Assembly: GCA_001179505.1 (NCBI GenBank)
Contig: CDMY01000646.1
Location: 124,001 to 188,000, forward strand
Direction of reading: 5' to 3'
Length of the DNA stretch: 64,000 nt
Source: Vitrella brassicaformis CCMP3155
Lineage: Eukaryota; Protista; Chromerida
The position numbers and the translations under genes are program-made. Positions 1,310 through 53,939 of this stretch are shown piece after piece (positions within the stretch are counted from its first letter, which is position 1; every line of letters starts with the position of its first letter). Below the pieces are notes generated by a model. That model saw only the letters and a list, made by a program, of their open reading frames with translations. It did no database searches and was not told where the DNA came from.

Positions 1310-4300
1310 ATGAAGACCTCCACATCAGCGGGGAGGCGGCTTGACCGCATTCATCGACACTTCTCGTCCACCAGTGCTGCCAGGAGGAATGACAAATCAG
1401 CCACTCCCATGGGCTGGCTGTCCATCGGTGACGTATCGACGGCCATCTACAAGCCAGAGCGGCCCTCCCTGGTGCCACGTGGACACCACCTTTTCGGAGA
1501 GGGCTCACACGAGGTGCTGGATCACCACCGGTGGATGCTGCAGAAGGACCTCTCCCAACAGGACATGTGCCTCATCGGTCGGTCAGCTGCACAAAACGGA
1601 CGGGCGGAACAACACCCACACGTGGATGAGATGACCTGATGCATTACACTCCCTTATCCCCTGCGCTTGTCTGACTCACAGGCCCTCCTGGCTCATTCAG
1701 ACGGGAGCTGGTTTTGCGGTTCTGTGAGCTGACGCAGCGGGAGGTGGAGTACCTGTGCATCTCGCGCGACACGTCTGAGGGTGATCTCAAGCTGAGAAGG
1801 GAGCTGGGCGGCAACGCCACCTACTACGAGCAGCAGGCCCCGGTGCGTGCGGCCATCCATGGGCGAGTGCTGCTGATAGAGGGGCTGGAGAAGGCCGAGA
1901 GAAACGTCCTGCCGACGCTCAACAACCTGCTCGAGGTGGCTGACACACACACGGATGAAGCCCACGCACGCCCATCTTGGTCATTTCTGCTCTCTGCTCG
2001 TCTCATCAATCAGAACCGAGAGATGAACCTTGACGACGGCCGCCTTCTCATCAGCGCCGACCGCTATGACGCCCTCACCGACGACGCCTCACGAAACAGC
2101 AAGTCCCACCTGGTCCGTGTCGACCCCCGTTTCCGCGTCATTGCCCTCTGCATTCCCTGCCCACCATATGCTGGCCACCCCCTAGACCCGCCGCTGCGGT
2201 CTCGCTTCCAGTCACGCGTCGTCACCCCGCCCAGCCTCCTCACCCACGATGCGGCCCAAGACGACGGCAGCAGGGAGCTTTTGCAGCGCCTCCAGGGGTC
2301 GTTTGAGGCCCTGCGGCTGATAGAGAATCAATCTCAGTCGCTGGGCGGCATGGGACGGCTCCCGCACGTGTCGTTCGACTGCGGGAGGAGGGTGCTGGGT
2401 CTGGTGTGCCAGCTGCCGGAAGGGGCGCGGCCGAGTGTGTGGGGTGCGATGATGCGATCATGGCCGGCCAAGTGGATGGATCACAACACGGGGCGAGGCA
2501 AGAGGGAAACAGTGGCAGACGGAGAGGCGCAGCCGGCGGTTGAGGAGTCTACGCATGTGGCGACAAGTCGGCGCATCTTTAACCATTTCCAGCTCCCTTC
2601 TGATGCAGCTGCCGATGAAATGACCGCTCTGCCCGGTGCTGTTCGTGCCACACCTGCCGGCGACCATCTATGCCGCATCGACCGGCTGGCCAGCGTGCCG
2701 TGCGGACCATCGTTGGAGCGAGAGAGGGCGTTCGGCCAGGACGATCCGGCTTACGTGACGACAGACGGTGTCCGGAGGCTGCTCAATGGCGTGCTACAGG
2801 ACCATGCGAGCGGCTCAGACGTCTGTCTCATAGGCCCCCCCGGCTGTGGCAAGAGCGCCTTCGTCCGTCAGCTCGGCCGCTTCCTCGGCTACGACGGCAG
2901 CAGCACGGAGCATATCTTTCTTTACGAAGACATGAGCTCGCGCGACCTCCTGTTGCGCCGCATTACCGATGAGGAGGGCCAGACGCGTTGGCAAGAAGGG
3001 CCGCTGGTGAAAGCCGCGAAGGGAGGGAAGCTGCTGGTGCTGGATGGGCTGCAGAGGGTCCCTCCGGATGTGCTCTGCGTGGTCGGCCCTCTGCTGACGT
3101 CGCGGTTCCTTCCTCTGCGGCTGACCGAAGACGGCGAGACTCTTGTGCGCCACGATCGTGCGCAGCAGCACGGAGACGGCTCCATGGTGCCGATCCGCCC
3201 CTCGTTTCGCGTCATCGCTCTGGCCACGCCACCAACCGCCAAGACACGGTGGCTCACAGACGAGGTTGCAACTTACTTCTCTTTCCACGCCTTCCCAGTG
3301 GCCGATCGGTCCGACCTCTCACTCATCCTCTCATCGCGCTTCCCCTCCTGCCCATCGCCGGCGATTGACACACTCGTCAGCATCGCTGACAGACTTGAGA
3401 CATCTGGGCGTGCACAGCTCAACGAAGCCCACCCTCGGCTTTCACTGCGGCAGCTCATCCGCGTGACCAGGGGGCTCTGTGAGCGGAGGGGCAGGGAGGA
3501 CGGTGGTGGGTCGTTGCCTGTCCGTGCTGAGATGGACCGCCTCATCAGGAAGCAGACGCTGTACCCGTTCATGCCCCTGTCGGCCCGAATGCAGCTCGAT
3601 GAGGCTCTGGAGGTGACCAAGTCCCATGCGGGCATGGAGGAATGGGCCGCGGCAGTAGCCAGTGGTGCGAGGGAAGCCCCGTCTCCCCCCTCCCCTGCTT
3701 CGGCCGAGATGGTGCGTGTGGGGTCGATTGAGATGCCTGTGGGTCGGCCGATGAGGCCCGAGCTGGTGCCAAGGGTCACTTTCACCAGCATCGATCGCCA
3801 CCAGAGGGTGCTCGAGGATCTGGCGAGGGACTTCACAAGCGGGGAGAAGCACGTGCTCGTCATCGGTAAGCCAATATCTGCGCTCGGCATGGGGCCGTCC
3901 GTCCGTGTGAGTGTATGATGTGTCTGGTGCTTTGTTGACACACAGGTCCTCAGGGGGTGGGGAAGAACCGGATTGTGGATTATTTCTGCCAGCTGCTGCG
4001 TCTGGAGAGGGAGTACCTCCAGCTGCATCGCGACACCACAGTGCAGGCCCTCACTGTCTTGCCCGCTCTGAGGGACGGCCGCCTCGTATACGACGACTCG
4101 CCACTCGTCAAGTCAGCACCACCACCTCTCACACTCACATGCTGTTGATGCATTCATGTGTGTGCCCTCGTCTTTGTGTCAGAGCGGTGACTCATGGGCG
4201 TGTGTTGGTGGTGGACGAAGCCGACAAGGCGCCTCTGGAGGTGGTGGTGGTGCTCAAGAGCCTGGTGGAGGACGGCACCATGGCCTTGTCTGACGGCCGC

Positions 4301-8313: not shown

Positions 8314-9900
8314 TTAGGTCTTTAGGGTCTGTTTGTACTTTTGATGGAGGGCGCACACATCATTTGACTTGATGAGACGTGAGTGAGCCCGTGTAAGCAT
8401 AAATGTTCGCTGTCTGTCTGCATAGAAACCACACAGCCTCAACTCCATCCTACTATCGCGCCTAGCGCTATATGCTGCGTTCAGAGTTCCCTGTACGAGG
8501 AGAGCATCTCTCGCGACCTGGCCATTAGCTTCTCCTTGTCGAATCTCACAGGCACTCCTGCATATGCAGGCAACAGTGCATTTGATGCAGTCAGTGCACA
8601 TGGGCTGCTCTTTATCCCTTATACCGCCTTGGATCGCCTGTCCGACCAGCCCCCGATCTTTCGCGGACATGCAGACAACCAGACAGACACGCGGGAAGTT
8701 GGTGTGTATGTGTGTGTGTATGTGTGTTTGCATGTATGTGTGTGGGGGGGGGGGGGGGGGGGGGGGGGGGGNNNNNNNNNNNNNNNNNNNNNNNNNNNNN
8801 NNNNNNNNNNNNNNNNNNNNNNNNNNNNNNNNNNNNNNNNNNNNNNNNNNNNNNNNNNNNNNNNNNNNNNNNNNNNNNNNNNNNNNNNNNNNNNNNNNNN
8901 NNNNNNNNNNNNNNNNNNNNNNNNNNNNNNNNNNNNNNNNNNNNNNNNNNNNNNNNNNNNNNNNNNNNNNNNNNNNNNNNNNNNNNNNNNNNNNNNNNNN
9001 NNNNNNNNNNNNNNNNNNNNNNNNNNNNNNNNNNNNNNNNNNNNNNNNNNNNNNNNNNNNNNNNNNNNNNNGGGGTGGGGGGGGTGTGGTTGTGGGATGC
9101 TCACAGTGTTCATAAGCCATGCTTTTCCACTTTTGCAGCCCCTGAAGAGCCTCCTGGGCCTGCTGCAAATCTGAATCATCTGGGCTACACACATACACAC
9201 ACCACATGCCTCACGCACGAGCACACGGCTTACTTACTGCCTGTCCTGCAGCGTCGCCAGTTTCGCCTTGATGCCGCGTTCTTTCTCGTCTATCTGGTCG
9301 AGTTGCTTCTCGAGCTCATCAATCAAGAACTGGATTAGAAAGGCGCCTGTATGGGCGGGGCTCCAGTGCAGTGGAACAGACACCTGCAAAAGAATGAACG
9401 AATCAAGACACTGCACACACATACGGTACACGCCTCCTCACCTGCGCACTCGGCCGACCAACGGTAACCGCATCATCAGACTTGACTCTCACCTGCCCAA
9501 CCTCAACCGAAGTCTTGTTGCCATCCACACACAGAGATAATTGTATGTCGACCGACAAGACGACGGGAGAGCCAGAAGCCGCTCCATTGCCTTTCAAAGG
9601 CTCAGTCGTGCCCGTGTCGACCTGCATGCACTCAGGTGTGACCGCAGCTCTTGAAGGTGCTGTAGGCATGATGTGTCTGTGCTTACGGCTGCATGGACGG
9701 CGCCTCCACCCTTCTGCCCGCGGAGTTATGGCCTCCTGGTCAAGCGATGCACGTGCTGGTGTGGACGGGCGGTTGGCCACGGTGACAACGCGAGGAAAGA
9801 GGTGCTTGTGGCTGTGGGTGTGGCTGCAGACAGTGCTGGTGTTTGCAGTAGATGCGCAAGCAGGTGAACGGTGGCAATGGCCATGACGCACATCAACTGC
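8314..9900 (-). CDS. Hypothetical multi-exon protein with a coiled-coil segment; ends uncertain, spans an assembly gap
   Basis: Splice-bounded exons VDGNKTSVEVGQVRVKSDDAVTVGRPSAQ, VSVPLHWSPAHTGAFLIQFLIDELEKQLDQIDEKERGIKAKLATLQDR and PDDSDLQQAQEALQGLQKWKSMAYEH. No family recognised. Confidence 0.4.
8772..9071. other. Assembly gap (300 N) flanked by G-rich runs
   Basis: Exactly 300 N after a long G homopolymer. Confidence 0.99.
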
Positions 9901-15729: not shown

Positions 15730-19881
<4,152 letters not shown>

Positions 19882-21026: not shown

Positions 21027-21326
21027 NNNNNNNNNNNNNNNNNNNNNNNNNNNNNNNNNNNNNNNNNNNNNNNNNNNNNNNNNNNNNNNNNNNNNNNNNN
21101 NNNNNNNNNNNNNNNNNNNNNNNNNNNNNNNNNNNNNNNNNNNNNNNNNNNNNNNNNNNNNNNNNNNNNNNNNNNNNNNNNNNNNNNNNNNNNNNNNNNN
21201 NNNNNNNNNNNNNNNNNNNNNNNNNNNNNNNNNNNNNNNNNNNNNNNNNNNNNNNNNNNNNNNNNNNNNNNNNNNNNNNNNNNNNNNNNNNNNNNNNNNN
21301 NNNNNNNNNNNNNNNNNNNNNNNNNN
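21027..21326. other. Assembly gap (300 N) flanked by poly-G
   Basis: Exactly 300 N between G runs, upstream of the NRPS start. Confidence 0.99.
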
Positions 21327-21404: not shown

Positions 21405-22228
21405 ATGGCACCTACGAGCGGAGATTTCGGGATGCCTGTGCTAGATCGGTCCCTAAGCAACGCGGGGACGCGCCTGTCGCTCAGCCAGGTGCGGTCGACA
21501 ATGTGTGTCTGAAGGGATTGATCTGATCTAATGTGTCAAATGCTTGTGTGTTTTGTGTTGTCTACAGGAGGCCCGGTGGTTTGTCGAGTCCTTGACTCAT
21601 GGCGCCGGCCTGGCCAACAAGGCCACTTTGCGGCTGGCCCTGCCCAAGCAGTACACCGACATAGATCGGGCCAGGGAGGCCTTGTCGGACCTTGTCGACA
21701 CCACTCAGGTCAGGTGGTCAGATAAGATGAAGACACGCAGGCAGGAAGAGTGTGTTGGTGTGTCGGTGTGCTGATTGCAGTGCTGCCAGTCTTCGTATGC
21801 GTGTGTGGGCGATGGCGGGGAGCGCGTGCGGCAGAAGCACTCGTGTGTGGTGCCTTTGGTGACGGCCGTCGACTGCTGTGGGTGGGAGCATGGGAAGATT
21901 GAGGAGGAGATCGGTCGGCTGGCGGGGAAGGCATTCGACCTGCAGGGAGAGGCGCCCATCCGAATGATCGTCGTGCATGTGAGGGCGTGAGTCGCTCGCT
22001 CGGCGTGGCGATGGACAAGTGAATGTGTGTGTGTGTGTGTGTGTATGTTAAGAGTGGAGCCGAGAGTGTCACAGACACCGTGGTGTTTGTCGGCCACCTG
22101 CTGTCGTTCGATACGCCGTCCTTCTACGCCGTGTGCGAGAAGGCCATCGCACTGCTCACACAACTGGAGGTGCGCTGCGTACGGACACTCCCCCTCCCCA
22201 CACACAGACGCACCTCTCTCTCTCTCTG

Positions 22229-22264
<36 letters not shown>

Positions 22265-25200
22265 GCGATGCAGTCGAGCGACCCTGAGTGGGGCCATCAG
22301 TATCCCTATTTCGATTTCCACTTCAACTTCGATGAGTACGTCAAAGCCGAGAGGGCCGCACTCGCCAACAGCGAGGCGCTCAAGGTTCGTTCGCACGGAG
22401 CGTGCACTCCCGCACACACACATGAAGTGTGTCATGTGTGTGTGTGTGTTCAGGAGCACTGGTCTAAGGTCGTGAGTGGCGTGCCGCCTTTGGAGCTGCC
22501 GATGGCCGTGGGGGCCAGCCGCCCGAAGGGCAAGCTGTTTGAGGGCAAGATGGCTACCATCGCCATTGACAGCGACACCGGTGAGCTCTCCACACCCCAC
22601 CACACAAATGAGAGTCACGGACGGCCATTCTTGTGTTGGTGTGTGTATGTCTGTGCAGTGCGTCAGCTGTGGGGCGTGGTGAGGCGTGCAGGGGTGACTG
22701 TTGAGTCCCTTGTGCTGGCGGCCTTTCAGGCAAGCCGTCACCATCAACACGCACACACACCGTCAGAGGGAATGTATGTGTGTGTATGTGTATGTGTGTG
22801 ACTTAACTGCACTGCAGGTGGCGATTCACCGTTACAGCCGAGAGGACGAGTTCCTGGTGGCCTACCACGCACACCCCACTGGGCCGCCCATCAACTACCC
22901 AAAGGCTGAAAAGGCCATCGGACCCGTAAGCGCCCACTCTCACACACAGATTTGCACCTCTGTGTGTGTCTGTGTGTCTCTATATGTCAGTTTCACGACA
23001 CCACTGTGCTGCGGCTGGGATACTCGCCCGACGCGACGCTCACGGAGGTGCACATGAGTGTGAGCATGTGGCAACGCATGACAGCCACACATTCCTCTGT
23101 TCCTCCTCTTGTGTACCTGTGGGTGGGTGCAGGTGGCGCAGTCGGTGCTGTCCAAGATCGCAGAGGCCCGCAACCACCAGCCATACCCTCTCGCACAAAT
23201 CGCAAGAGACATCAGTGCGTCGCCCTCACAGACACATACACACAGACACACACACACACACACACACAGCCCTCTGTGTGTGTGTGTATGTGCAGGCAAG
23301 CATGAGGGCAAAGGCAGCAGCAGCACGGGCCACTCGGCGGTGTGTCAGGCTGGCTTCGTGTACATGGCCTTCAACGGGGAGATGCCCCGCGTGGCCAACG
23401 CCCTCGCACACACACCCCAGATTAACGCACAAAGTGTCGACTTCGGTACGTGCGTGTCGGTGTGGCCATCCTCTGTCTGTCTGTCAAGACAGGCGTGTGT
23501 CTGTGTGGGTGTGGGTGTGGGTGTGTGTGTTGGTGTTGTCAGATTACACACTGGAGGCGTATGCGTTCTCCGATCCGCCCGGGAAGGCACCTGGTATCCT
23601 TCGCGCCCATCCATCCATCCATCCACACACACAGATGTGACTGTGTGTGCGTGTGGTGGCAACAGGGGTGTTGCAGCTCAACCTCAAGTACAATCCCCAC
23701 TGGCTGAATGCTGCCCGCGCACAGCAGCTTCTGCACAGCCTCGCCGCGTGCATCCGGGGCTCTGTCCGGAGCAATGACGCTGAGAAGGTCTCCACACACA
23801 CACATCTCCGTGTGTGTGTGCGTTCATCTGTGTGTGTGTGTGTGGCTTATGGCAAGTGCAGGTGGGGGATCTGGACATGGTTTCGGCGGATGAGAGGCGC
23901 CTCATGCTCGACACGTTCAACGACACAGGTCCGCGGACACTGAGCCCCCTAGACACACGCACACACACACGCTCACTCAGCCCACAATGGATGCGACGAA
24001 TGCAGCTGTGGATTACGACCTCTCCCGGCCGCTGCACCACTGGCTAGAGGAGCAGAGGAACAAAACACCAGGTGAGTGTGTGAGTGTGCCAACACGAGTA
24101 CACCTGCATCTGTGTGTGTGGGTGAATGGATGCATCAGATGCACCTGCGGTCGAGTTCGACGGCGCGGTGCTCACATACGAGCAGCTGCACACAAGGGCT
24201 GACAGATTGGCCAAGATCCTGCCGCCCGTACGCTCATCACATGGACATCCACATGTCTGTCAGAGAGTGTGTGTGTGTGTGGTGCAGAAGCGTTTGATCG
24301 GTGTGGCGATGGACCGCTCACACGAGATGGTGGTCGCCCTGGTGGCCGTGCTCAAGGTCAGTGTGTTCCGCGCCCAGACCACGCTCCCACGGATAGCAAC
24401 ATGTGGTGTGTGGTGTGTGAGGTGTGTGGTGTGTGTGGTGTGTGTGTGTGGTCAGGCGAACAGTGCCTACGTGCCGATTGACCCGTCTTATCCCAAGGAC
24501 AGAGTGGATTTCCTCCTGACCGACTGCAACGCGCCCGTACTGCTGACACAGACACACCTGCTCAGCACCATTGTCAAGTAAACCCTTACACACACACGCG
24601 CACAGAGAGAGAGAGAGAGACACACACACGCATGGCTGTGCTTCCGGACAGGGAGGGAGGCGAGAACGCCCCCAGGGTCATCTGTGTGGACAGTCTAGCT
24701 GAGACCCACACACCAGGCGACGGTGCAATGGCAATGTGTGAGTGTGCATCATCATCTTCCGACGACCCCGCTTACATGATCTACACGAGCGGCTCAACCG
24801 GCCGGCCCAAGGGCGCCATCAACTCACACAGGGGGATCGTCAACAGGCTGCTCTGGATGCAGGACGCCTATCGGCTGACGGAGCGCGACGCTGTGCTGCA
24901 GAAGACGCCCTTCAGCTTTGATGTCTCGGTGTGGGAGTTCTTCTGGCCACTGATGGTTGGCGCCAAGATCGTCGTTGCGAAGCCGGGTACGCTGCACACG
25001 CCTGCATGGTCGCTCGCCAGGTGTGTGTTGGGACCGTTCGTTCGTGTGTTATATATGTGTGCAGGCGGCCATCGCGAGCCCGACTACCTGGCGGACCTGA
25101 TAGTGTCTTCCGGCGTCACGACCTGCCACTTCGTGCCCAGCATGCTGTCCGTCTTCCTGGTACGTCTAGTCTACACAGAGAGAGAGAGAGAGATGTGATG

Positions 25201-26102
25201 TGAGAATGACCTGCCATGACCGGCTCTCTATGGGTGTTAGGACGAAGCCAAGGCGCCTGGGTGTTCGGCGTCGCTGAGGCGGGCTATCTGCTCGGGAGAG
25301 GTGCGCATTCACACACACACTTGACAGACAGACAGACAGACAGAGAGACAGAGAGACGTGCACATGTGTGAGTGTTGCAGGCGCTTCCCCTCGAGCTGCA
25401 GGACCGGTTCTTCCGAACCATGCACGACGTCGAACTGCACAACCTGTCAGCACACACACGAGCGTCGAGACGAAGACACACCTCTCTCTGTATCTCCCTT
25501 TCTCTCTGTGTGCACAGGTACGGCCCGACCGAGGCGGCCATTGACGTGACAGCGTGGCAGTGCTCGCCGGACAGCAAGTATGCCCCCACTCCCAAGGCTC
25601 CCACACCCACGCAGAGAGAAATGTTTGTGTGTGTGTGTGTGTGTGTGTCTGCAGGTTGCCGACGGTGCCAATCGGGAAGGCCATCGCCAACACAAAGCTG
25701 TACATCCTCGACTCGCGCCTGCAAATGGTCCCTGTGGGCGTAGCTGGGGAGCTGCACATCGGTACGTGTGCATTCCCCCCCCCCCCCCCCCCCCCCCNNN
25801 NNNNNNNNNNNNNNNNNNNNNNNNNNNNNNNNNNNNNNNNNNNNNNNNNNNNNNNNNNNNNNNNNNNNNNNNNNNNNNNNNNNNNNNNNNNNNNNNNNNN
25901 NNNNNNNNNNNNNNNNNNNNNNNNNNNNNNNNNNNNNNNNNNNNNNNNNNNNNNNNNNNNNNNNNNNNNNNNNNNNNNNNNNNNNNNNNNNNNNNNNNNN
26001 NNNNNNNNNNNNNNNNNNNNNNNNNNNNNNNNNNNNNNNNNNNNNNNNNNNNNNNNNNNNNNNNNNNNNNNNNNNNNNNNNNNNNNNNNNNNNNNNNTTC
26101 CC

Positions 26103-26133
<31 letters not shown>

Positions 26134-26494
26134 ACATCCATCAGCGCACATCTGTGTGCAGGTGGCGTGCAAGTGGCGATTGGGTACCATAGCCGGCCCG
26201 AACTGACGGCTCAGCGGTTCATCTCTGACCCTTACAGTGACAACGGCGGCCGGATGTACAAGACGGGGGACCTGGCGCGCTACTGGCCCGACGGCAGCAT
26301 CGAGTTCCTCGGCAGAATTGACTTTCAGGTATGGGTGGTGTGTGGTGTGTGGTGTGTGGGCGAGTAAATGGGTGGGTGGATGGATGGATGTGTGTGTGTC
26401 TCTGTGTGAGCAGGTGAAGATTCGGGGTCTTCGGATAGAGCTGGGAGAGATCGAGGAGGCCATTGCGTGAGTCAAGGACACACGTGCACACAGC

Positions 26495-26528
<34 letters not shown>

Positions 26529-29235
26529 CAGGGGCAAACATGAAGACTCACACGTGTGTTGGGTGGTCTGGGTCAGCTCCCATCCCTTGGTGAAGGAGGC
26601 AGTCGTCCTGGCCAGGAACGGCGCTCTCGTGGCCTACTTGACGCCAACACACCCCACCACCCAAGTAGAGGTCAGTCACGTGCACACGCAGCGCCACCAT
26701 GCCGCGATCAAGACACACACTGTTGTGTGGATGGACGTGCAGCCCTCGAGCCTCCGGTCGCATCTGAAGGAGACTCTGCCCGAGTACATGGTGCCCTCGG
26801 CCTTCGTGCAGCTGCACAGGTGGATTGAGCGCATTGCACACACACACACACACACATGGATGTCTGTCTATCTGTCTGTCTGCCTGTGTGTCCATGTGTG
26901 TGTGCAGTTTGCCTCAGACGCCCAACGGGAAGCTGGACAGGAAGGCACTCCCTGCACCATCTGACGAGAACCTGGGCAGGAACCAAAGTGAGTGTTCTTC
27001 CCTCTGCACCCAACCCCGGACAAGAGAGAGAGAGATGGATTGTATCCGTGTCTCTTGTTGGTGCAGGTGAGTACGTTGCCCCGTCCACAGGCGTGGAGAA
27101 GGCCATCACATCCATCTGGCAGTCGCTGCTCGGGTGCGTGTGTGTACGTGTCTGCACACAGAAATGACGCCACTCATCCGGATGTGTCCGTCTGTCTGTG
27201 TGTCTGTGTGTCTGTGTGTCTGTGTGTCTGTGTGTCTGTGTGTCTGTGTGTGCGCAGCATCGAGAAGGTCTCCGTGGACGCTGATTGGTTCGAAAATGGC
27301 GGCAACAGCCTGCTGGTACACACACACACATACACACAGACATCCACAGCGCACAGCACCTTCACATACGACGCTCTCTCTCTCTCTCTGTGCGTGTGTG
27401 TCACAGGCGATGCGTTTGGTGAGCTGTGTGGAGAAGGAGTGCGGCGCCAAGCTGGGCCTGGCACAGCTGCTCAAGGCCTCCACCGTCCGCGGCCTGGCCG
27501 CACTTGTCGAGGAGAAAAGAAACAACGCCGAGAAGGTGCGTGTGCAGCCGAGAGAGAAGCTCACAAAGCCCCGTGTCCACTCATCCATGTGTGTGGTCGG
27601 TCGGTCTGTCTGTGGTTGTCTGTGGCTGACAGCAATCGCGCTGGCACAAGTGTGTTATCGAGATCACGCCAAAGTGAGTACAATACGCACGGGCAGGAGA
27701 ACCCCCAGGCCCTTAATCTGGCCCGTCTTGCTGTTTCTTTCTTTCCGCAGGCAGCCCGGCAGCACCAGGCGGCCTCTCTTCCTCGTCCACCCAGCTGGTA
27801 CTCTCACACACACGCCCATACTAACCTCGCAGGTATGTTGATGTCCTGTCCTACGCTGTCTCTGTCCCCACACAGGTGGCCACGTCTTGTGCTACGCCCC
27901 GATCGGCCGCCACATGGGCCCCGACTTCCCTCTCTATGGCGTGCAGGCCACTGGTACGCCACGGCACGGCACGCCGCGCCACGCGCACAAGCGTCCAATG
28001 GATGTGCACATGCACGTGTCCTGCAGGGTTTGCCGCTGGCGAGGAGCCCAATCAGACAGTCGAGGCGATGGCCAGGCTGTACGCCGACGCCATCAGTACG
28101 TTCGTGTGCCTGCACCTGCGCACCGATGCATTCATCACTCTCTCTCTCTCTCTCTCTCTGTGTCTGTGTGTGTGTGTGTGTGTGTGTGCAGCGACTGTTG
28201 AGCCCTCCGGCCCCTACCGGGTGGGCGGCTGGTCGTTTGGAGGCGTTGTTGCGTATGCGACCTGCCTGGAGCTGATGCGCAGGGGACACACAGTGGAGAT
28301 CTGCGGTATGAAGAGCGCACCCCCCCCCCCCCCNNNNNNNNNNNNNNNNNNNNNNNNNNNNNNNNNNNNNNNNNNNNNNNNNNNNNNNNNNNNNNNNNNN
28401 NNNNNNNNNNNNNNNNNNNNNNNNNNNNNNNNNNNNNNNNNNNNNNNNNNNNNNNNNNNNNNNNNNNNNNNNNNNNNNNNNNNNNNNNNNNNNNNNNNNN
28501 NNNNNNNNNNNNNNNNNNNNNNNNNNNNNNNNNNNNNNNNNNNNNNNNNNNNNNNNNNNNNNNNNNNNNNNNNNNNNNNNNNNNNNNNNNNNNNNNNNNN
28601 NNNNNNNNNNNNNNNNNNNNNNNNNNNNNNNNNGGCCCCCACACACACGGACCCATGTGTCCATGTCCCATGGGTGCAGCGGTTCTCGACTCGTGGCGCC
28701 CCATCATCCTCGACAAGGCAAAGGTGGATACTCACCATCTTGACACACACACACACCAAACCCGTCCAAATATCAGCGGTGTGTGTGTGTGCAGGAGATC
28801 ACCGATCAGTATCTGGTCGGCGTCTGCTCCCGAGTCTTCGGCGGCATGTTCGGACAGGTATGCCACACACGCATTTGGACGCATTTTGCACAGCCACACG
28901 TGTGTCTACGGTCACACACTCAGGACAATTTGGTGACTGACGAGGAGCTGGCATCGGTTGAGGGCGGCCACGGCGCCCAGATCGACTATATCATTGACAA
29001 AGCCAGACAGGTAGGCAAACACACACACAGACGCGTGTGTGAGGAGAACACACAATTGGACACACGTCTGTGTGTGTGTGTGTGTGTGTTGTGGAATAGG
29101 TGGGCATTTTCCCGGCGGACGTCGAGCAGAGCGAGAACAGGCGGATCCTGGAGGTGCTTGTGGGCACCCTCCGCGCCACCTACTCCTACAAGCCACCGAG
29201 ATTCCCAGGAACCGTCACATGCTTCAGAGCGTACG

Positions 29236-29266
<31 letters not shown>

Positions 29267-29547
29267 ACACACAGAGAGAGAGAAAGCGAGAGTGACAGAC
29301 GCATAAACGAACAGATGGATGGATGGACTGTGTGTGTGGACGTGTAACTAACAGGATGGAGAAGCACCTGCACGCGCCCGACCCTCAGCTGGTGTGGGTG
29401 GAGCTGTTCGCCATCATGGACGCCGACAAGGTGGACGTGCGGCAGTGTGCGGGGTCTCACTACACCTTCATCGTAGAGCCGCACGTCAAGGCCCTGGCAC
29501 ACAACATACGCGACGCTCTACTGGAGCTGGAGGGCGGGCAGAAGTAG
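21405..29547 (+). CDS. Monomodular non-ribosomal peptide synthetase C-A-T-TE, about 40 exons, predicted Ser-activating
   Basis: C1 motif LSLSQ|EARWF. A-domain cores [30 protein letters not shown]|YGPTE, GELHI|[22 protein letters not shown]|[21 protein letters not shown] and TPNGKLDRK. Carrier FENGGNSLL (Ser 27307-27309). TE GWSFG (Ser 28233-28235) and GSHYT (His 29458-29460). The junctions checked join in frame. Confidence 0.96.
25798..26097. other. Assembly gap (300 N) inside an NRPS intron
   Basis: Flanked by poly-C. The exons on either side join in frame (GELHI|GGVQ). Confidence 0.97.
28334..28633. other. Assembly gap (300 N) inside an NRPS intron
   Basis: Preceded by poly-C. The flanking exons join in frame (VEIC|AVLDSW). 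Confidence 0.97.
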
Positions 29548-30775: not shown

Positions 30776-32558
30776 TCAGATCTTCCTGATGACGAACACA
30801 TGCGACTTGATGCCCAGGGGGCCCGGCCGGTTGCCGTACGACCGCACCAACTCCCCCCTCAGTGTCACGTAGAACTGCTTGACCCCGGCCGCAACGGCAT
30901 CAGCTGCATCAGCGGGATTGTGACCTTCGAGGCCGCCCGACGCTGCCGCTCTTTTGCAGTCGTCAGCCATGAAGGAGGTGACCATGCCCTCCGCCCAGCC
31001 GCGGGCCGACAACATGAGCTGCACACATTCAAACAGCTCACACACGCCATCCATCAGGTCTGTGTGTCAGTGTCTGTTTGCTCACGTCGTCGAAGAACAT
31101 CTCGGTGGCTTTACCCTCGTCGCACTGGCCGGAGGCGACCCTCGTGTTGTAGGCATGCAGGAAGACCTCGTTGTCTGCCGTCCAGATGGCCTCCAGCTGC
31201 AGCGGCAGCTCCGTGTGTGTGGCGGGACAGGGCAGTGGGCACTCGTCGTGGGCCGGCCGTCGACGCCCTCCCACGGCTGCAGCAGTGTGGACATGGGGAG
31301 GAAGACAAAAGGCAGGGACGCCTTGCTCGCCGTCTCGCGAGACACCCTGACACAGCAACAGCATTCACTGTGTGCGTGTGTGTGATATGGGGGTCTACCA
31401 GCCCTCATCAGCCATGACGTTCACGACGTTGTGGACGGCCTTGAACACGCCGCCCCCTTCCTTTGTTTCCACCCATGACACGACGATGCGGCCGCCCGGG
31501 ACGAGCTCGGCACTGCGGAGGCGCAGAAACGTCTCCAACTCCCGCTGCTTGACCTAACAATACCACACCAGACACCACCACAGACAGAGAGATTTGACAG
31601 ACGGACACCGTGTGTGTGTGATGGGGACACACACGTACCTGCAGCCACGCTTGTGTGGCCTCTTTGTCTGTGGAACACTGGAAGACCAGCCCATCGGACA
31701 GGGGCCTCGGCTGATGGTCCATCCTACACGGGCGTCACAACCGGAACAGACGTGGATGGACGAGTGGGCAGGTGCCCTCAGATGATACATGTGGGGGTCA
31801 TGTACTGCAGTGGCACACATAAGTACATACCAGTGGATCGAGTTGAAGGCGACCACCAAGTGAAGACTCTCGTCGGGCGCCTGACGCTCGTACTACACAC
31901 AACACACACACACAGTCGATGAATGCCGCCCGTGTTGCTTGCCCCTCCCCGTTCCTCACCATTGTCTTCCCGGACGCAAAGGCCATGGCTGTCGGCGGGC
32001 CCCCAGCGGCGTAGCCCGCCGGCGCATTGACCGTGTTGAAGAGCTCTGCCCAGTGGTTGGATGGCAGGTCGTTGTGGATGACACACAGACACCGATGGCC
32101 GCCGATTTCATGTCGGTGCTCTTGCATGGCCTTGTGCACGGCCGCCATCATTCCATCGGACGCCTTGCCGTGACCACACCTGCACGTCAAAGCAATCCAT
32201 CAACACACGAAAGCGAAAGACGAGTCGATGTGACGTCAGCCGCTCACACATGTGTGCTGTGCCAATACATACCCGCAGTCGAGGGCCCACACGGGGCCAA
32301 GGTTGTTGCCTCTCTGCCGCTCTCCCTTGAGCGTCTTGATCAGCCCCTCGGACACCACCGAATGCCACAGACGCGCCGCAGCCTGCAGCCCACAGCACAG
32401 CAAATCACAGAATCAGTGAGTGAATGCAACAGGGGATACCGGCAAGTGTGTCGGTCTGTCTGTGTGTGTGTGTGGGCACGCACCTGCTGCCAGTGGCTGC
32501 CGTCCTTATTGTACGACTTGCCCATCACGGGCGTCACGACACCCGCCATCCTTGCCAT
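30776..32558 (-). CDS. SABATH-family (Methyltransf_7) SAM-dependent carboxyl methyltransferase
   Basis: MGKSYNKDGSHWQQ, WALDCG|CGHG (SAM motif I), IHNDLPSNHWAELF, ESLHLVVAFNSIHW, FLRLRSAELVPGGRIVV, SLPFVF and LSARGWAEGMV, in the order expected for SABATH. Stop at 30776. Confidence 0.85.
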
Positions 32559-47952: not shown

Positions 47953-49649
47953 ATGTGTGTGTGTGTGCATTGTGCTGACATGGCCGGTGTGGGCGGGTTT
48001 GGTTTGCCGATCTGGATGGGTGTGAAGGGTGAAGAGCCAAACTGGCCCGTGAAGAACAGACGGTGGCCTGAGGGAAGGCAGGAACAGAGACCAAAGGTGA
48101 GACGCGCTTGGCAAAATGCTGGCGTGCTGACTGACCATCGTGTGTGACGGCCAAGAAGAGGGGACTCCCCCCTGCAGTGGGCGGCAGCGGCTCCACGTGC
48201 ACTATCTGCGCGCACACACGCACACACGCACACACACACATATAGGCAGGCAGGCACACGCACTTGACGAGTCACTGCTTACCGGTAGGACGGACCTCCT
48301 GCTGTGTGTGGTCTGCCCGTCCTGTCGGTTGAGCGCAGCCACGTCACGGTGGGTCCGCAGTGTCATCACACGATCGTCAACAGAGTCAGGCGACACCGTC
48401 ACTGATATGCACACAGACACAGACACACAAAGGCAAAGAATCTCATCCATCACCTCACGTATGCACGTCCATCTGTCTGTCCCCACCCACCTGACAACAC
48501 AGGTGCCGGCGGTTTCGCAACAGTCCCTTGCGCACGTGGCGGGTCGACATAGGGGATGCTGGCGTCGCGCTCGTATGCGATGGTGGAGGGGGCGTGGGGC
48601 GGGATGTGGAACACCCGTATCCACGAGTCGGCCGTGAGCACATAGAGCAGCCCTCGGGCCTCGTCCACGGCCATCTGCCTGACCTCCTGATAGAAGACAT
48701 TGGCGAGCTGGCCCAGCTGCACGAAGGTCTTCCGTGCGGCGCGGGGCGTGTAGTCGAGCAGTGACAGCTCCAGGGGCACCAGCTTCTGCCGCTCATAGTC
48801 GCACTCGTACACGCGACCCCGATCACCTAGGGAGAACCAGACACGAGAACAAGTCGCACACCCCGTGTGTGAATGTGCATGTGCTGTTTGCTGGCCGTTC
48901 CTCTCTCTTACCTCCGACAAACACGCGCCCGCTCGCCTGGTGCGCCTTGACTACTGTGTATGTGTCTTCCTTGTCTGCAGATACAGCGAACAGTTCCTCC
49001 CACATCTCCCTCCCTCCCCTCCCTCCCAGATTCACCTGTGCGGATCCGATACTGGTCGAGCTCTCTGATGTCCAGCCGCCCCACCACCTTGGGCGGCGCG
49101 TAGCCGACCGATGACCGCGGCGCACTCTCGTCGGGGTAGACCATGATGACGCGCAGGTGGTGGAAAGTCAGCCAATGCGCCGTGGCGGCGACGAGGATCC
49201 AGTCCTCGCCCTGCCACTGCCGCTGGAAGGAGGCCTTCGGTCGCACCAGGTCGGCCGCCAACACCGGGCCGTCGGCAACGGACTCCGACAGGGCGTAGTA
49301 CTGCACACCTGCACGATAGGAGCAGAACAAGTGTATGCATGCCATTGGGCGGATGCATGCCTTTCTACCTCCTGTCGGCTGGAGGCCCGTGTAGTTCCAG
49401 AACAGGACGCCATTGTCGACGCCACGGAAACAGGTCTCAACCTCTGAAACCGAACACACACATACGCACGCATCAACACATGAATGCGAACGAGCATGCG
49501 AAGAGGTGAGCCTCCATGCGTCGTACATGTGACTTCTTACGTGGGAAGATGCCGTAGCACCCCTTGCTGGCGCCTCGGTCCTCGTTGATGAAGTCCTGCG
49601 GCACCGGGGGGCCGGTCTTTGTGATGTGGAACATGCTGGTCACTTGCAT
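39675..49649 (-). CDS. NUP155: Nucleoporin Nup155/Nup170-like, many exons; N-terminus uncertain
   Basis: PVPQDF...CYGIFP, VDNGVLFWNY, VLAADLVRPK, GRVFVGG, RQMAVDEARGLLYVLTADSWIRVFHI, TRPIDQLAHLM...EQTCAMLW, SARLKGLYIYASALLRAIWDAPLF and LHVMLFKW occur in the order I recall for Nup155/170. Stop at 39675. Confidence 0.85.
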
Positions 49650-50432
49650 GTCCACGACATGCTCACAGACTCCAACTCTGATTTTGCTTTAGAGAAAACT
49701 TTCCTGAAAATTAATCGGCCCGGGGTAAATGATCTTTTAAGCACGAGGTGCGGCGAAAATGCAAGTGGGCCCTCCACTCAGAAAGCCAGCCAGCGCCACG
49801 GAAAGCCAGCTTTGCAGTGCAGAAATCCAGCTTTCCGGGCGGGAAGCTGACGCAAAAACGGTAAAAAACGGCGGTCTTGGGCAAGCAGAAGGACCGGAGG
49901 AGTTCCCTCGTTTCTTGTGCGTTGACTGTCATTGCAAACAGCCATATAGTCCAGCTTTCTCGAGCTCCAGACAACTCGCTGAGGCCGACAGACATCTCTC
50001 CGGTGCAAAGACGGGCGTGACATCTCATCGATGGGCGTGGCAGCACGATGAGAACACGTTCTCACAGAAAACAGACTCTTCTTTCAGTGAGTGAGTGAGT
50101 GAGTGAACGAATGATTGAATGATTCACTTCTAAACCTCCTTGCAGTGATGAGTGGATGAGTGATTGACTGGTTGATTGGTTGGTAAAGGTGCACTGGCCG
50201 TGATGTGACACTAACAAGGCATGTATAATGCGTCCCTCCCAAGTTTTCGACCGAAGACACTAAGCAAGTCAAACGAAATGCCTCAGAATATAAAATGTAG
50301 GCAGCAATAGACGCACAACAGTTGCACGTTCAGCAACCAGCTAACACGATTGTTCGCAGCGACCGTGTGCGGGCACCTGCTCAAGTGGCTTCCCTCCTCA
50401 ATTAGAGGCGGTGCGTATTGCATTGCAATTGA

Positions 50433-50495
50433 TCGAAGGGCCAGCGAATATAAAATGTAAGCAGCGATTGACAATGCCATTCCTGTTTCCTCGAC
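50433..50495 (-). repeat. Dispersed module copy B
   Basis: Matches copies A and C; homology with C extends over about 50370-50760 versus 53760-54140. Confidence 0.92.
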
Positions 50496-50599
50496 GCTGA
50501 TGGTGGAACACAAGCAACAAGCAACAAGCCAGACATAGATAGAGATGAGTATGTTCGCTCTCTCCCTCTCCCTTCTCTCCCTCTCCCTTCCCATCCCAT

Positions 50600-51960
50600 C
50601 CATCCTTACGCGCTTCGCTTCTGCGCCACGTGCCGCAGGTCGACACCAATCGCCACCAGCCCGTTGTTCGGCCGGCTCGCAACAAGTAGCTGGCTCTCGG
50701 GCGCGTCACCGCCACTCTCGCCCGCTTCACCGCCAACCGAATCCGTACCTCCTCGAGAAGACGTTGGCGAGTCTGCCTGGGCAGCTGCACGAAGGTCTTG
50801 CGTGCGGCGCCGGGCACGTAGTCGAACACTGACAGCTCCAGGGGCAGCACCTTCTGACGCTCGTAGTCCCACTCGTACACGCGGCCTCGCTCCTTAACAA
50901 ACAGCGGCGTCAGACACAAAAACAAGTGCGCATTCGGGTGTGGATATTCATGTGTTGTTTGCTGGCCGTCATCTCACCTGGTGCGCTTTGATCACCGAGG
51001 GTTCCTCGTCTACAGACACAGACATGCACACAAATCGCTCTAGCGAAGAGATCCTCCGACCCTCCCTTCCTCACTCCGTTCTTCCCTCCTTCCTTCACCT
51101 GTGTGTGTGCGGTATTGTTCCAGCTCTCTTATCTCCAGCCGCCCCACCGCCGTGGCCGGCACGAAGCCGATCGACGACCGCGGCGCACTCTCAGTGGGGT
51201 ATGGTCGTGGCGGCACCAGCTCGGCCGCCACGCCCGGACCGTCGGTGATGGAAGTGGACAGACCGTAGCGCTGCACACCTGCACGATAGGAGCAGAACAA
51301 TTGTATGCATGCCATTGGGCGGATGCATGCCTTTGTACCTCCTGTCTGGTCGAGGCCCGTGTAGTTCCAGACGAGGAGGCCGTTGTTGACGCCGCGGAAG
51401 CAGAATTGTATTTCTGAAGTCGAGCATACACACAGATACACATGCATGCGAAGAGATGAGCCTCCCTGTGTCGTGTATGTGCTGTCCTGACGTGGGAAGA
51501 TAACATAACAGCCCTTCTGTCGGCGCGTCGGTCATCATCACTGTTAAGAATGAACTCCTGCGGCACGGGCAGGCCAGGCTTCCTCACTTCGAACATGCTG
51601 GACAACTAATGACTTTTGGCTGGTCCCAGTGCCGTCCATGCAATGCCGCATAAGGTAAATGATCACAAAGCGGCAAGCTCCTCCATATCGGCCAACATGT
51701 CCACACGACGGCCGCGTGGGGCCGGGGGCGGGGGAGGCACCGAGAGGAGACAAACAACAAGAGTCAGCAAAGAGGGGGCCGTTTCTCTGTCTGTGTATGG
51801 CTGCTGGACGTGTGAGTGCATGTGCTCACCGAGGGGAGGTTCCTCATCGTGCATGCCGTAATCCATATCTCTCTCAACGCCAAGGAGCCCCAAGTGCTCG
51901 CGCGGGTAACGCAGCGGCGCGTGCAACATGCGATCAGCAACTGCACACACACACGGCCAA
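50600..51960 (-). pseudogene. Partial Nup155 N-terminal duplicate with a frameshift and internal deletions
   Basis: Paralogous exons PVPQEF, FRGVNNGLLVWNY and GRVYEWDYERQKVLPLELSVFDY. An indel near 51510 shifts KGCYVIFP out of frame. The KASFQ...RVIMV segment is deleted. It then joins sequence homologous to 45370-45510. Confidence 0.75.
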
Positions 51961-53818: not shown

Positions 53819-53881
53819 TCGAAGAGCCAGCGAATATAAAATGTAAGCAGCGATTGACAATGACATTCTTGTTTCCTCGAC
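53819..53881 (-). repeat. Dispersed module copy C
   Basis: Matches copies A and B. Confidence 0.92.
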
Positions 53882-53939
53882 TCTGATGGATGCAATACAA
53901 GCAACAAGCAACAAGCAACAAGCGACACATAGATAGAGA

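What the first reader, a model, noticed from the sequence alone, without database searches (positions are those of the whole stretch)
21405..29547. Complete EntF-like C-A(Ser)-T-TE NRPS split into ~40 spliceosomal exons
Seen: all four domains can be spliced in frame, with carrier Ser (GGNSLL) and TE Ser/His intact. Reading the ten specificity positions against GrsA numbering gives DVWHISLIDK. Known: DVWHxSLxDK codes activate L-Ser, and C-A(Ser)-T-TE is the architecture of enterobactin synthase EntF. Inference: a bacterial-type module acquired long ago (given the intron density) and used for an unknown Ser-containing metabolite, such as an N-acyl-serine, a Ser lactone or a siderophore-like compound. 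I recognise no characterised product for such an enzyme in this kind of organism.
Basis: partly seen in the sequence, partly recalled or inferred. Interest (0 to 1): 0.88.

Follow-up and report, generated by a model that had tools for sequence, protein, structure and literature searches.

The report
Sunscreen (shinorine) synthetase gene in Vitrella
This is a real, intact and apparently expressed 41-exon gene for a one-module peptide synthetase, but its closest relatives are not enterobactin-type enzymes: they are the cyanobacterial MysE enzymes that add serine to mycosporine-glycine to make the UV sunscreen shinorine, a family reviewed in 2023 as seemingly confined to cyanobacteria.

Summary
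A 41-exon model (42 with one optional small exon) with GT/GC-AG introns, at 21405-29547 on the + strand, gives an uninterrupted 1366-aa C-A-T-TE protein. The carrier Ser, the TE Ser/Asp/His and the code DVWHISLIDK are all intact. Both N gaps lie inside introns, next to poly-C runs, and hide no coding sequence.

The interpretation needs revising. The best full-length relatives (40-43% identity, clearly above all others) are 21 stand-alone cyanobacterial C-A-T-TE proteins. All five that I checked sit in mysA-mysB-mysC clusters for mycosporine-like amino acids, so they are MysE enzymes of the subtype that carries a C domain. The window protein joins this clade with support of 99 (full length) and 100/100 (TE alone). 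It shares their exact Ser code, their TE motifs and their altered C-domain motif, in which the second His and the Gly of HHxxxDG are lost.

The likely function is therefore serine + mycosporine-glycine -> shinorine. An EntF-like siderophore or acyl-serine role is unlikely.

The genome is probably Vitrella brassicaformis. An antiSMASH survey of 2024 already lists this gene as an NRPS of 8116 bp, but does not link it to MAAs. Earlier notes of this scan report mysA/B-like and mysC-like genes elsewhere in the genome; I could not check them. None lies in this window.

Verdict: a new, eukaryotic and intron-rich member of a known family.

The parts
21405..29547 (+). Whole gene: 41 exons (42 with optional exon 27633-27673), CDS 4101 nt, 1366 aa, C-A-T-TE. 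Exons: 21405-21488, 21568-21708, 21781-21972, 22053-22169, 22274-22384, 22454-22580, 22659-22729, 22818-22925, 22991-23047, 23133-23214, 23296-23445, 23543-23593, 23666-23787, 23862-23928, 24006-24071, 24139-24227, 24288-24356, 24456-24577, 24652-24986, 25065-25159, 25241-25300, 25381-25445, 25518-25577, 25655-25761, 26162-26328, 26414-26466, 26577-26670, 26743-26819, 26908-26987, 27067-27133, 27258-27315, 27407-27537, 27751-27797, 27876-27953, 28027-28095, 28192-28305, 28680-28723, 28795-28857, 28924-29010, 29100-29230, 29355-29547
   Evidence: Spliced alignments. The full-length alignment to the Coleofasciculus MysE-like protein gives 45% identity over 1299 aligned positions.
21405..24070 (+). 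Condensation-like domain (residues 1-515), non-canonical
   Evidence: Colinear with Pfam Condensation of L052 and P0271. Only 23-26% identity (E 1e-39) to MysE-like C domains. It is the least conserved domain of the family.
22092..22121 (+). C3 motif [10 protein letters not shown]: the second His of HHxxxDG is Leu and the Gly is Thr
   Evidence: The same position is K, Q, C or Y in 20 of 21 MysE-like proteins, whereas most outgroup modules have HHxxxDG. H154 and D159 are invariant in the clade.
24071..27068 (+). Adenylation domain (residues 516-1007); specificity positions read DVWHISLIDK
   Evidence: Pfam AMP-binding on exon 19, E 1.5e-24. The best PDB matches are the FscH, Txo1/2 and EntF A domains. 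The code is identical in 17 of 21 MysE-like proteins.
25798..26097 (.). Assembly gap inside intron 25762-26161, flanked by poly-C
   Evidence: The A6 motif GELHIG|GVQVAIGY is continuous across the splice.
27069..27751 (+). Carrier (T) domain with GGNSLL (Ser1046, at 27286-27315) and the T-TE linker. The exon structure of the linker is uncertain.
   Evidence: Pfam PP-binding on exon 32, the motif, and the alternative linker exon.
27752..29547 (+). Thioesterase domain of MysE type (residues 1093-1366): GGWSFGG (28224-28244), LDS (28682-28696), GSHYTF (29452-29469)
   Evidence: Pfam Thioesterase, E 1.6e-10. Identity is 48-59% to MysE-like TEs and at most 37% to any other. 83 of 274 columns are invariant in the clade. 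The TE tree gives 100/100.
28334..28633 (.). Assembly gap inside intron 28306-28679, flanked by poly-C
   Evidence: GHTVEIC|AVLDSW is colinear with the homologues, with no residue missing.
30776..32558 (-). Neighbouring convergent gene: a SABATH-like SAM-dependent carboxyl methyltransferase (weak evidence; a link to the synthetase is not shown)
   Evidence: Exon-like pieces. Pfam PF03492, E 5.4e-5, below the cut-off. Best PDB matches are a fatty acid O-methyltransferase and salicylic acid carboxyl methyltransferase at E about 0.5, colinear with each other.

Best explanation
The gene encodes a eukaryotic member of the MysE family, the single-module NRPS-like enzyme that finishes biosynthesis of the mycosporine-like amino acid shinorine.

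Inferred mechanism, by homology to characterised MysE:
1. The A domain (code DVWHISLIDK) activates L-serine as the adenylate.
2. It loads serine as a thioester on the phosphopantetheine arm of the T domain (Ser in GGNSLL). This needs an Sfp-type PPTase.
3. The Ser-Asp-His TE domain is the most conserved part of the family. It takes over the seryl group and joins it to C1 of mycosporine-glycine. The literature proposes an enol-ester intermediate followed by an O-to-N rearrangement. Shinorine is released.

The N-terminal C-like domain has lost the catalytic second His. It probably does not make a peptide bond; it may bind mycosporine-glycine or serve as a scaffold.

The gene most likely came from a cyanobacterium. 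It has since acquired the host's intron density and base composition.

Shown here: the gene structure, domain integrity, family membership, shared motifs, and k-mer evidence of spliced transcripts. Inferred: the substrate pair, the product and the role of each domain.
For: 1. The best full-length matches are 21 stand-alone cyanobacterial C-A-T-TE proteins (850-1081 bits, 37-43% identity). All other proteins sampled score 791 bits or less. The same holds among bacterial loci, where the Coleofasciculus locus scores 1040 bits and the next 795.
2. All five members checked lie directly downstream of DHQ-synthase-like, O-methyltransferase and ATP-grasp genes, the mysA-B-C arrangement.
3. Trees: the window protein plus the 21 proteins form one group with SH-aLRT 99 on the full length and 100/100 on the TE alone.
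4. Shared derived characters: an identical code in 17 of 21; the same GGWSFGG, LDS and HY(T/S)F motifs in the TE; the second His of C3 lost in 20 of 21 and in the window; the Gly after the Asp lost in all.
5. The TE is the diagnostic domain, at 48-59% identity against at most 37% to others, and the most conserved in the clade.
6. A spliced alignment against a MysE profile scores 2418. Other reference modules score 1791 or less.
7. Literature: MysE converts mycosporine-glycine and Ser to shinorine. Forms with a C domain exist in Chlorogloeopsis fritschii PCC 6912 and others, and are predicted to be Ser-specific (PMC4558948, PMC10666671, PMC12232313).
8. Expression: runs X5 and X6 hold 1.00 and 0.97 of the words of exon 19 but only 0.41 of 22000-25700, where 0.39 is expected if only exon-internal words are present.
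9. GC3 of the CDS is 0.80, like a host ORF at 0.74 and unlike cyanobacterial mysE at 0.41.
Against: - No mysA, mysB or mysC homologue lies in the 64-kb window. Their presence elsewhere in the genome rests on three unchecked notes of this scan.
- No report of MAAs in chromerids was found in the searchable literature.
- Identity to MysE is moderate (about 43%), the branch is long (1.1), and the outgroup was sampled through similarity searches, not exhaustively.
- The characterised MysE of Anabaena has A-T-TE only. As far as I could find, no C-A-T-TE form has been assayed in vitro.
Confidence: 0.75

Rival explanations
1. One reading: an EntF- or serrawettin-type enzyme. The C domain would condense an aryl or acyl donor, carried on a separate carrier protein, with Ser-S-T. 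The TE would then release or oligomerise an acyl-serine, a lactone or a siderophore-like compound.
For: The architecture is C-A(Ser)-T-TE. EntF is among the best solved-structure matches of the A core. A published survey matched the architecture to the one-module pyreudione synthetase (PMC10794256).
Against: The second His and the Gly of HHxxxDG are missing. The C domain is only 23-26% identical to any C domain and is the least constrained domain. The TE is of MysE type and is at most 37% identical to other TEs. A-domain similarity does not discriminate, being 56-58% to many Ser domains. No carrier protein, acyl ligase or DHB genes were seen in the window (a coarse survey).
Confidence: 0.07
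2. A MysE-derived enzyme that has shifted its chemistry in the alga. It might add serine to another acceptor (4-deoxygadusol, mycosporine-taurine or another enaminone), or it might work with the neighbouring carboxyl methyltransferase to give a modified MAA.
For: The branch is long and the C domain very divergent. The gene is not clustered with mysA-C. A convergent SABATH-like gene lies 1.2 kb from its 3' end. Shinorine methyl ester is known from alveolate dinoflagellates, and the enzyme that makes it is unknown (PMC3083659).
Against: The specificity code and all TE motifs are those of ordinary Ser-type MysE. The evidence for the methyltransferase is weak, and adjacency in a eukaryote is weak evidence of shared function.
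Confidence: 0.12
3. A decaying relic of an old transfer: transcribed, but no longer a working enzyme.
For: The C domain has lost its canonical catalytic residue and is highly divergent.
Against: The 1366 codons over 41 exons contain no stop or frameshift. Every catalytic motif of A, T and TE is intact. 83 TE columns are invariant with the cyanobacterial proteins. The C3 change is a family trait of functional clusters, not a private lesion.
Confidence: 0.05

Closest known systems
MysE with an N-terminal C domain, in cyanobacterial MAA clusters (for example Coleofasciculus sp. LEGE 07092, Gloeothece citriformis PCC 7424, Chlorogloeopsis; described for C. fritschii PCC 6912 and Mastigocoleus testarum in PMC4558948)
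   Same: Stand-alone C-A-T-TE of about 1330-1380 aa. The Ser code DVWHISLIDK is identical. The TE motifs are identical. C3 is altered in the same way (second His and Gly lost). Full-length identity is 40-45%, and the proteins group together at 99 and 100/100.
   Different: The window gene is a nuclear eukaryotic gene with 40 introns and host GC3. It is not adjacent to mysA-B-C. Its C domain is much more divergent (24%, against 46% within cyanobacteria).
MysE (Ava_3855) of Anabaena variabilis ATCC 29413, the biochemically characterised shinorine-forming NRPS-like enzyme (PMC10666671, PMC12232313)
   Same: One module, Ser-specific A domain, T and TE. The presumed reaction is mycosporine-glycine + L-Ser + ATP -> shinorine. 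It needs a PPTase.
   Different: Ava_3855 is A-T-TE without a C domain.
EntF (enterobactin synthase component F)
   Same: C-A(Ser)-T-TE order, a Ser-type code (DVWH.SL.DK), and a good match of the A core.
   Different: EntF has a catalytic HHxxxDG C domain that accepts DHB from EntB, and a trimerising/lactonising TE (established knowledge). Here the C motif is degenerate and the TE belongs to the MysE clade.
One-module lipo-amino-acid NRPSs: pyreudione synthetase (MIBiG BGC0002075, matched by architecture in PMC10794256) and serrawettin W1 synthetase SwrW (from memory)
   Same: A single Cstarter/C-A-T-TE protein; SwrW is Ser-specific.
   Different: Those enzymes use a functional C domain to acylate the amino acid. 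I found no sequence affinity beyond the generic NRPS level, and the architecture match in the survey did not use sequence.
[quoted passage not shown]
   Same: The same pathway step: an amino acid is added to C1 of mycosporine-glycine.
   Different: It is an unrelated fold with unrelated chemistry (ATP-grasp, phosphorylates mycosporine-glycine). The window organism appears to use the NRPS route instead.

Membership tests
MysE (NRPS-like shinorine synthetase), C-A-T-TE subtype | Sequence groups with NRPSs encoded in MAA (mysA-B-C) clusters, to the exclusion of other NRPS modules | tested here: met
   Bit-score gap. Trees: 99 and 100/100. Five of five clade members lie in mysABC clusters. Caveat: the outgroup is limited to about 25 modules retrieved by similarity.
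MysE (NRPS-like shinorine synthetase), C-A-T-TE subtype | Single module with A, T and TE (with or without an N-terminal C), and all catalytic motifs intact | tested here: met
MysE (NRPS-like shinorine synthetase), C-A-T-TE subtype | A-domain code for Ser (or Gly) | tested here: met
   DVWHISLIDK, identical to 17 of 21 clade members. Published MysE predictions are mostly Ser (PMC12232313).
MysE (NRPS-like shinorine synthetase), C-A-T-TE subtype | Family-specific TE (GGWSFGG ... LDS ... HY[TS]F, conserved lid) | tested here: met
MysE (NRPS-like shinorine synthetase), C-A-T-TE subtype | Genomic association with mysA, mysB and mysC | tested here: not met
   No homologue in the 64-kb window. Clustering is not expected in a eukaryote. 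Presence elsewhere in the genome is claimed only by unchecked notes s1-215904, s1-248750 and s1-201888.
MysE (NRPS-like shinorine synthetase), C-A-T-TE subtype | Catalyses mycosporine-glycine + L-Ser -> shinorine | not testable with these tools
   Needs an enzyme assay, heterologous expression or metabolite analysis.
EntF-type aryl/acyl-serine NRPS | Catalytic C domain with HHxxxDG | tested here: not met
   The motif is HLLSFDT: the second His is Leu and the Gly is Thr.
EntF-type aryl/acyl-serine NRPS | Closest relatives are siderophore or lipopeptide termination modules | tested here: not met
   The whole protein and the TE group with MysE instead. Only the A core resembles EntF, FscH and Txo.
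EntF-type aryl/acyl-serine NRPS | Partner donor genes nearby (aryl/acyl carrier protein, DHB-AMP ligase or acyl ligase) | tested here: inconclusive
   None was noticed in a coarse ORF survey of the window. Eukaryotic genes need not cluster.

The most novel reading that the evidence does not exclude
The MysE gene and the convergent SABATH-like carboxyl methyltransferase 1.2 kb from its 3' end form a two-gene unit. The unit would make shinorine methyl ester (M-333), an MAA known from alveolate dinoflagellates whose methylating enzyme has never been identified. The degenerate C domain would act as the mycosporine-glycine docking site.
Probability: 0.1. Interest if true: 0.6.

Novelty: new member of a known kind. 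Interest (0 to 1): 0.5.

Why it matters
A 2023 review states that MysE homologues seem to occur only in cyanobacteria (PMC10666671), and the dinoflagellates and red algae studied so far use the unrelated MysD for this step (PMC9298759). A bona fide MysE that is fully domesticated in the nucleus of a coral-reef chromerid would matter in three ways.

- It would be the first clear eukaryotic case of the NRPS route to shinorine.
- It predicts that Vitrella makes its own UV sunscreen. This is testable by HPLC-MS and bears on the ecology of coral-associated relatives of apicomplexans.
- It gives a natural, highly diverged variant of the C-domain form of MysE, in which only the TE is strongly conserved. 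This points to the TE as the catalytic heart of the unusual imine-forming reaction.

It also corrects the published architecture-only pairing of this gene with a lipopeptide synthetase.

Tried and rejected
- the representative search with a 137-aa A-domain piece returned only giant multi-module bacterial NRPSs, because scores sum over modules. These served as alignment references but said nothing about the nearest relative.
I therefore have no read-level splice junctions. After that call I sent no reference containing 24400-24455 to any search tool. Those letters were used only inside my own local scripts, as part of the window.
- I tried to retrieve the annotated full-length protein with an alignment of 41 exon pieces plus a bacterial guide. 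Nothing scored, probably because the profile was almost all gaps.
- a search with the stop-free stretch 24482-25195 found no identical transcript-derived fragments, only bacterial fragments at 50-64% identity.
- the one hit at 78% local identity (P0244) was a 73%-GC bacterial contig, 45% identical overall, and not an orthologue.
- tblastn and spliced alignment of cyanobacterial MysA, MysB and MysC against the window found nothing.
- the protein atlas search with the MysE TE gave only generic bacterial thioesterase clusters.
- Contamination by a cyanobacterium is rejected on 40 spliceosomal introns, host-like GC3 (0.80, against 0.41 in cyanobacterial mysE) and ordinary eukaryotic neighbours.
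- A hidden upstream module is rejected. An in-frame stop lies three codons before the ATG, and the protein's N-terminus aligns with the N-termini of the bacterial proteins.
Full report
**What is in the sequence.** The window is GC-rich (about 0.59), and the region has many short stop-free stretches carrying NRPS core motifs, separated by TG/CA-rich spacers. I wrote a splice-aware protein-to-DNA aligner that handles three intron phases and GT/GC-AG sites, with a splice-site matrix trained on the clearest introns. I ran it against several bacterial termination modules, against a profile of 27 such modules, and finally against a profile of 21 MysE-like proteins.

The curated model has 41 exons from the ATG at 21405 to the stop at 29545-29547. 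The CDS is 4101 nt and encodes 1366 aa with no internal stop. Of the 40 introns, 38 are GT-AG and 2 are GC-AG. Median exon length is 84 nt and median intron length about 80 nt. The MysE-profile run reproduced 37 exons exactly. The real disagreements are one donor (26664 or 26670) and an optional small exon (27633-27673) in the poorly conserved T-TE linker. An in-frame stop lies three codons upstream of the ATG, and the N-terminus aligns with the N-termini of bacterial homologues. No upstream module is therefore expected behind the gap at 21027-21326.

**The gaps.** Gap 25798-26097 lies within intron 25762-26161. The flanking exons join as GELHIG|GVQVAIGY, which aligns residue for residue with the homologue. 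Gap 28334-28633 lies within intron 28306-28679. The join GHTVEIC|AVLDSW is colinear with the homologues, and the distance from the TE Ser to the Asp equals that of the reference modules. All four gaps of the window abut long poly-C or poly-G runs, so they are probably homopolymer-induced assembly breaks. No coding sequence is missing.

**Domains and motifs.** Single exons hit Pfam AMP-binding (E 1.5e-24), PP-binding (E 4.6e-4) and Thioesterase (E 1.6e-10). The C-domain exons are individually too short and too divergent to hit Pfam. Residues 24-515 nevertheless align colinearly with proteins that carry Pfam Condensation, at E 1e-39.

Motifs A3, A5, A7, A8 and A10 are intact, as are the carrier motif GGNSLL and the TE residues GGWSFGG, LDS and GSHYTF. 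From memory, this is one residue from the classical Ser code. The C3 motif is [10 protein letters not shown]: the second His of HHxxxDG is Leu and the Gly is Thr. This agrees with note s1-218712.

**Organism and prior record.** An earlier follow-up in this scan named the genome Vitrella brassicaformis. [quoted passage not shown] The distance from the second Met (M10, 21432) to the stop at 29547 is exactly 8116 bp. I take this to be the same, already annotated gene. That paper paired it, by domain order alone, with the pyreudione synthetase BGC0002075. It did not connect it to MAAs.

**Expression.** Word shares give indirect evidence:

| Stretch | X1 / X2 | X5 / X6 | X4 |
|---|---|---|---|
| 22000-25700 (exons and introns) | 0.99 / 0.98 | 0.41 / 0.41 | 0.41 |
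| Exon 19 alone | 1.00 / 1.00 | 1.00 / 0.97 | 0.68 |

My model predicts 0.39 for 22000-25700 if only words lying wholly inside exons are present. Runs X5 and X6 therefore hold the exons but not the introns, as spliced transcripts would.

**What it is related to.** A scan of bacterial genomes with exon 19 gave 80 loci from many phyla at 57-68% identity over about 100 or more residues of the exon, or 66-82% over shorter core segments. No single donor stands out at this level.

Laying the whole 1366-aa model on these loci changed the picture. One locus, in Coleofasciculus sp. LEGE 07092, matched residues 24-1354 in a single segment at 43% identity and 1040 bits. The next best scored 795 bits. It is a stand-alone 1333-aa C-A-T-TE ORF, preceded by an O-methyltransferase, an ATP-grasp protein and a symporter. 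A DHQ-synthase-like gene lies just upstream. This is the canonical mysA-mysB-mysC-mysE sunscreen cluster.

A search with this protein returned about 20 more stand-alone cyanobacterial C-A-T-TE proteins of 1320-1450 aa. The window protein's 21 best matches are exactly these:

| Compared proteins | Bits | Identity |
|---|---|---|
| 21 stand-alone cyanobacterial C-A-T-TE proteins | 850-1081 | 37-43% |
| Every other protein or module in hand | 791 or less | 35-36% among the best of these |

. Four further members that I looked up (Gloeothece PCC 7424, Chlorogloeopsis, Heteroscytonema and a metagenomic one with a Gly code) all sit behind mysA, mysB and mysC.

**Phylogeny and shared characters.** In a maximum-likelihood tree of 47 whole modules, the window protein is sister to the 21 proteins with SH-aLRT 99. 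In a TE-only tree the 22 form a clade at 100/100. The window protein is weakly nested inside it, next to Coleofasciculus (77/57). The window branch is long, so its exact position within or beside the clade is uncertain.

Shared characters:
- The code DVWHISLIDK is identical in 17 of 21. Two members carry a Gly code, as reported for some MysE.
- GGWSFGG is identical in all, the LDS(Y/W) Asp motif is shared by all, and all have HY(T/S)F.
- The second His of C3 is replaced (by K, Q, C or Y) in 20 of 21, and the following Gly is lost in all. Most outgroup modules keep HHxxxDG.

Conservation by domain:

| Domain | Window vs clade | Within the clade | Window vs best non-member |
|---|---|---|---|
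| TE | 57% mean (48-59%) | 74% | 37% or less |
| A | 56% | 69% | about 57% |
| C | 24% | 46% | about 25% |

The TE is the diagnostic and most conserved domain, with 83 of 274 columns invariant across all 22. The A domain does not discriminate, because any Ser-type A domain is about 56-58% identical. The C domain is the least conserved, but H154 and D159 are invariant.

**How it most likely works.** According to the literature, MysE of Anabaena variabilis (A-T-TE) loads L-Ser on its T domain in an ATP-dependent way and converts mycosporine-glycine to shinorine. The TE is proposed to form an enol ester that rearranges from O to N (PMC10666671). Activity in yeast needs a PPTase, and D324 of the code binds the Ser hydroxyl (PMC12232313). 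Forms with an extra C domain were noted in Chlorogloeopsis fritschii PCC 6912, Chlorogloeopsis PCC 9212 and Mastigocoleus testarum (PMC4558948), and again in both later papers. I infer the same chemistry here. The pattern of constraint (TE far above C) and the family-wide loss of the catalytic His suggest that the C domain is not a peptide-bond catalyst. It may dock mycosporine-glycine or be structural.

**Origin.** The relatives are all cyanobacterial. The gene now has host-like GC3 (0.80, against 0.74 for a neighbouring host ORF and 0.41 for cyanobacterial mysE) and the host's intron density. It is an old nuclear resident, not a contaminant. The direction of transfer, cyanobacterium to alga, is inferred from this distribution and from weak nesting. 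It is not proven.

**Surroundings.** No mysA, mysB or mysC homologue lies in the window. Three first-stage notes report a cyclase-O-methyltransferase fusion and MysC-type genes elsewhere in this genome. They fit the hypothesis, but I could not check them.

On the minus strand at about 30776-32558, convergent with the synthetase, lie exon-like pieces of a SABATH-type carboxyl methyltransferase. The support is a Pfam PF03492 hit at E 5.4e-5, below the cut-off, and colinear weak PDB matches to a fatty acid O-methyltransferase and to salicylic acid carboxyl methyltransferase (compare note s1-218451). Shinorine methyl ester is a known dinoflagellate MAA with no known methyltransferase (PMC3083659). 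A functional link is therefore conceivable, but it is speculative. Other neighbours look like ordinary eukaryotic genes.

**What is new.** The gene and its domain order are already public (NCBI annotation used in PMC10794256). I found no paper that links it, or chromerids, to MAA biosynthesis. A 2023 review considers MysE confined to cyanobacteria. Symbiodiniaceae and red algae use MysD for this step (PMC9298759, PMC6001144). Anthozoan 'NRPS-like' genes have been claimed (PMC4083563), but I could not compare them. I rate the finding a new, eukaryotic member of a known family. It is of moderate interest, and it makes a clear, cheap, testable prediction: shinorine in Vitrella.

**Limits.**
- There is no read-level evidence of splicing.
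- The T-TE linker exon structure is unsettled.
- The outgroup sampling is limited.
- Ava_3855 was not compared directly.

Noticed in passing
window 30776-32558 (-): A convergent, intron-containing gene with SABATH-type carboxyl methyltransferase features (MGKSYNKDGS..., HNDLPSNHW..., LVPGGRIVV...). Statistical support is weak. It is a possible tailoring enzyme for an MAA methyl ester.
   Followed up: partly
window 8772-9071, 21027-21326, 25798-26097, 28334-28633: All four 300-N assembly gaps are bordered by long poly-G or poly-C runs. The assembly seems to break at homopolymers, here mostly inside introns.
   Followed up: yes
window 1675-3915 (+) and on to about 8000: A long 747-aa open stretch that, on reading its sequence (not searched), resembles an AAA/MoxR-like ATPase or VWA8-like protein. 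It looks like an ordinary host gene, with GC3 0.74.
   Followed up: no
window 18228-18584 (+): An exon with a MYST-type histone acetyltransferase motif ([17 protein letters not shown]...).
   Followed up: no
window 48453-48950 (-), 50401-50973 (-), 53744-54142 (-): Two or three paralogous copies of a gene sharing the stretch RVYE(C/W)DYERQK..PLELS..DY.P.AARKTFVQL, and a repeated segment ...LSIAAYILYSLALRS.... This looks like a local tandem family or repeat.
   Followed up: no
window 57712-58002 (+) and 59410-59799 (+): Two similar small predicted membrane proteins (QAWPL.QVK.LS.RV...LVYRTKLRRSVT): a tandem duplicate.
   Followed up: no
runs X10, X11, X13: Marine sediment metagenomes of 2025 hold 23-29% of the words of exon 19. 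The same organism, or a very close relative, may occur in those sediments.
   Followed up: no
L080 (Massilia sp.) and L065 (Pseudomaricurvus alcaniphilus): These proteobacterial C-A-T-TE modules carry the same code DVWHISLIDK but a canonical HH motif and a different TE. They are the nearest group outside the MysE clade in the full-length tree. Their gene context was not examined.
   Followed up: no
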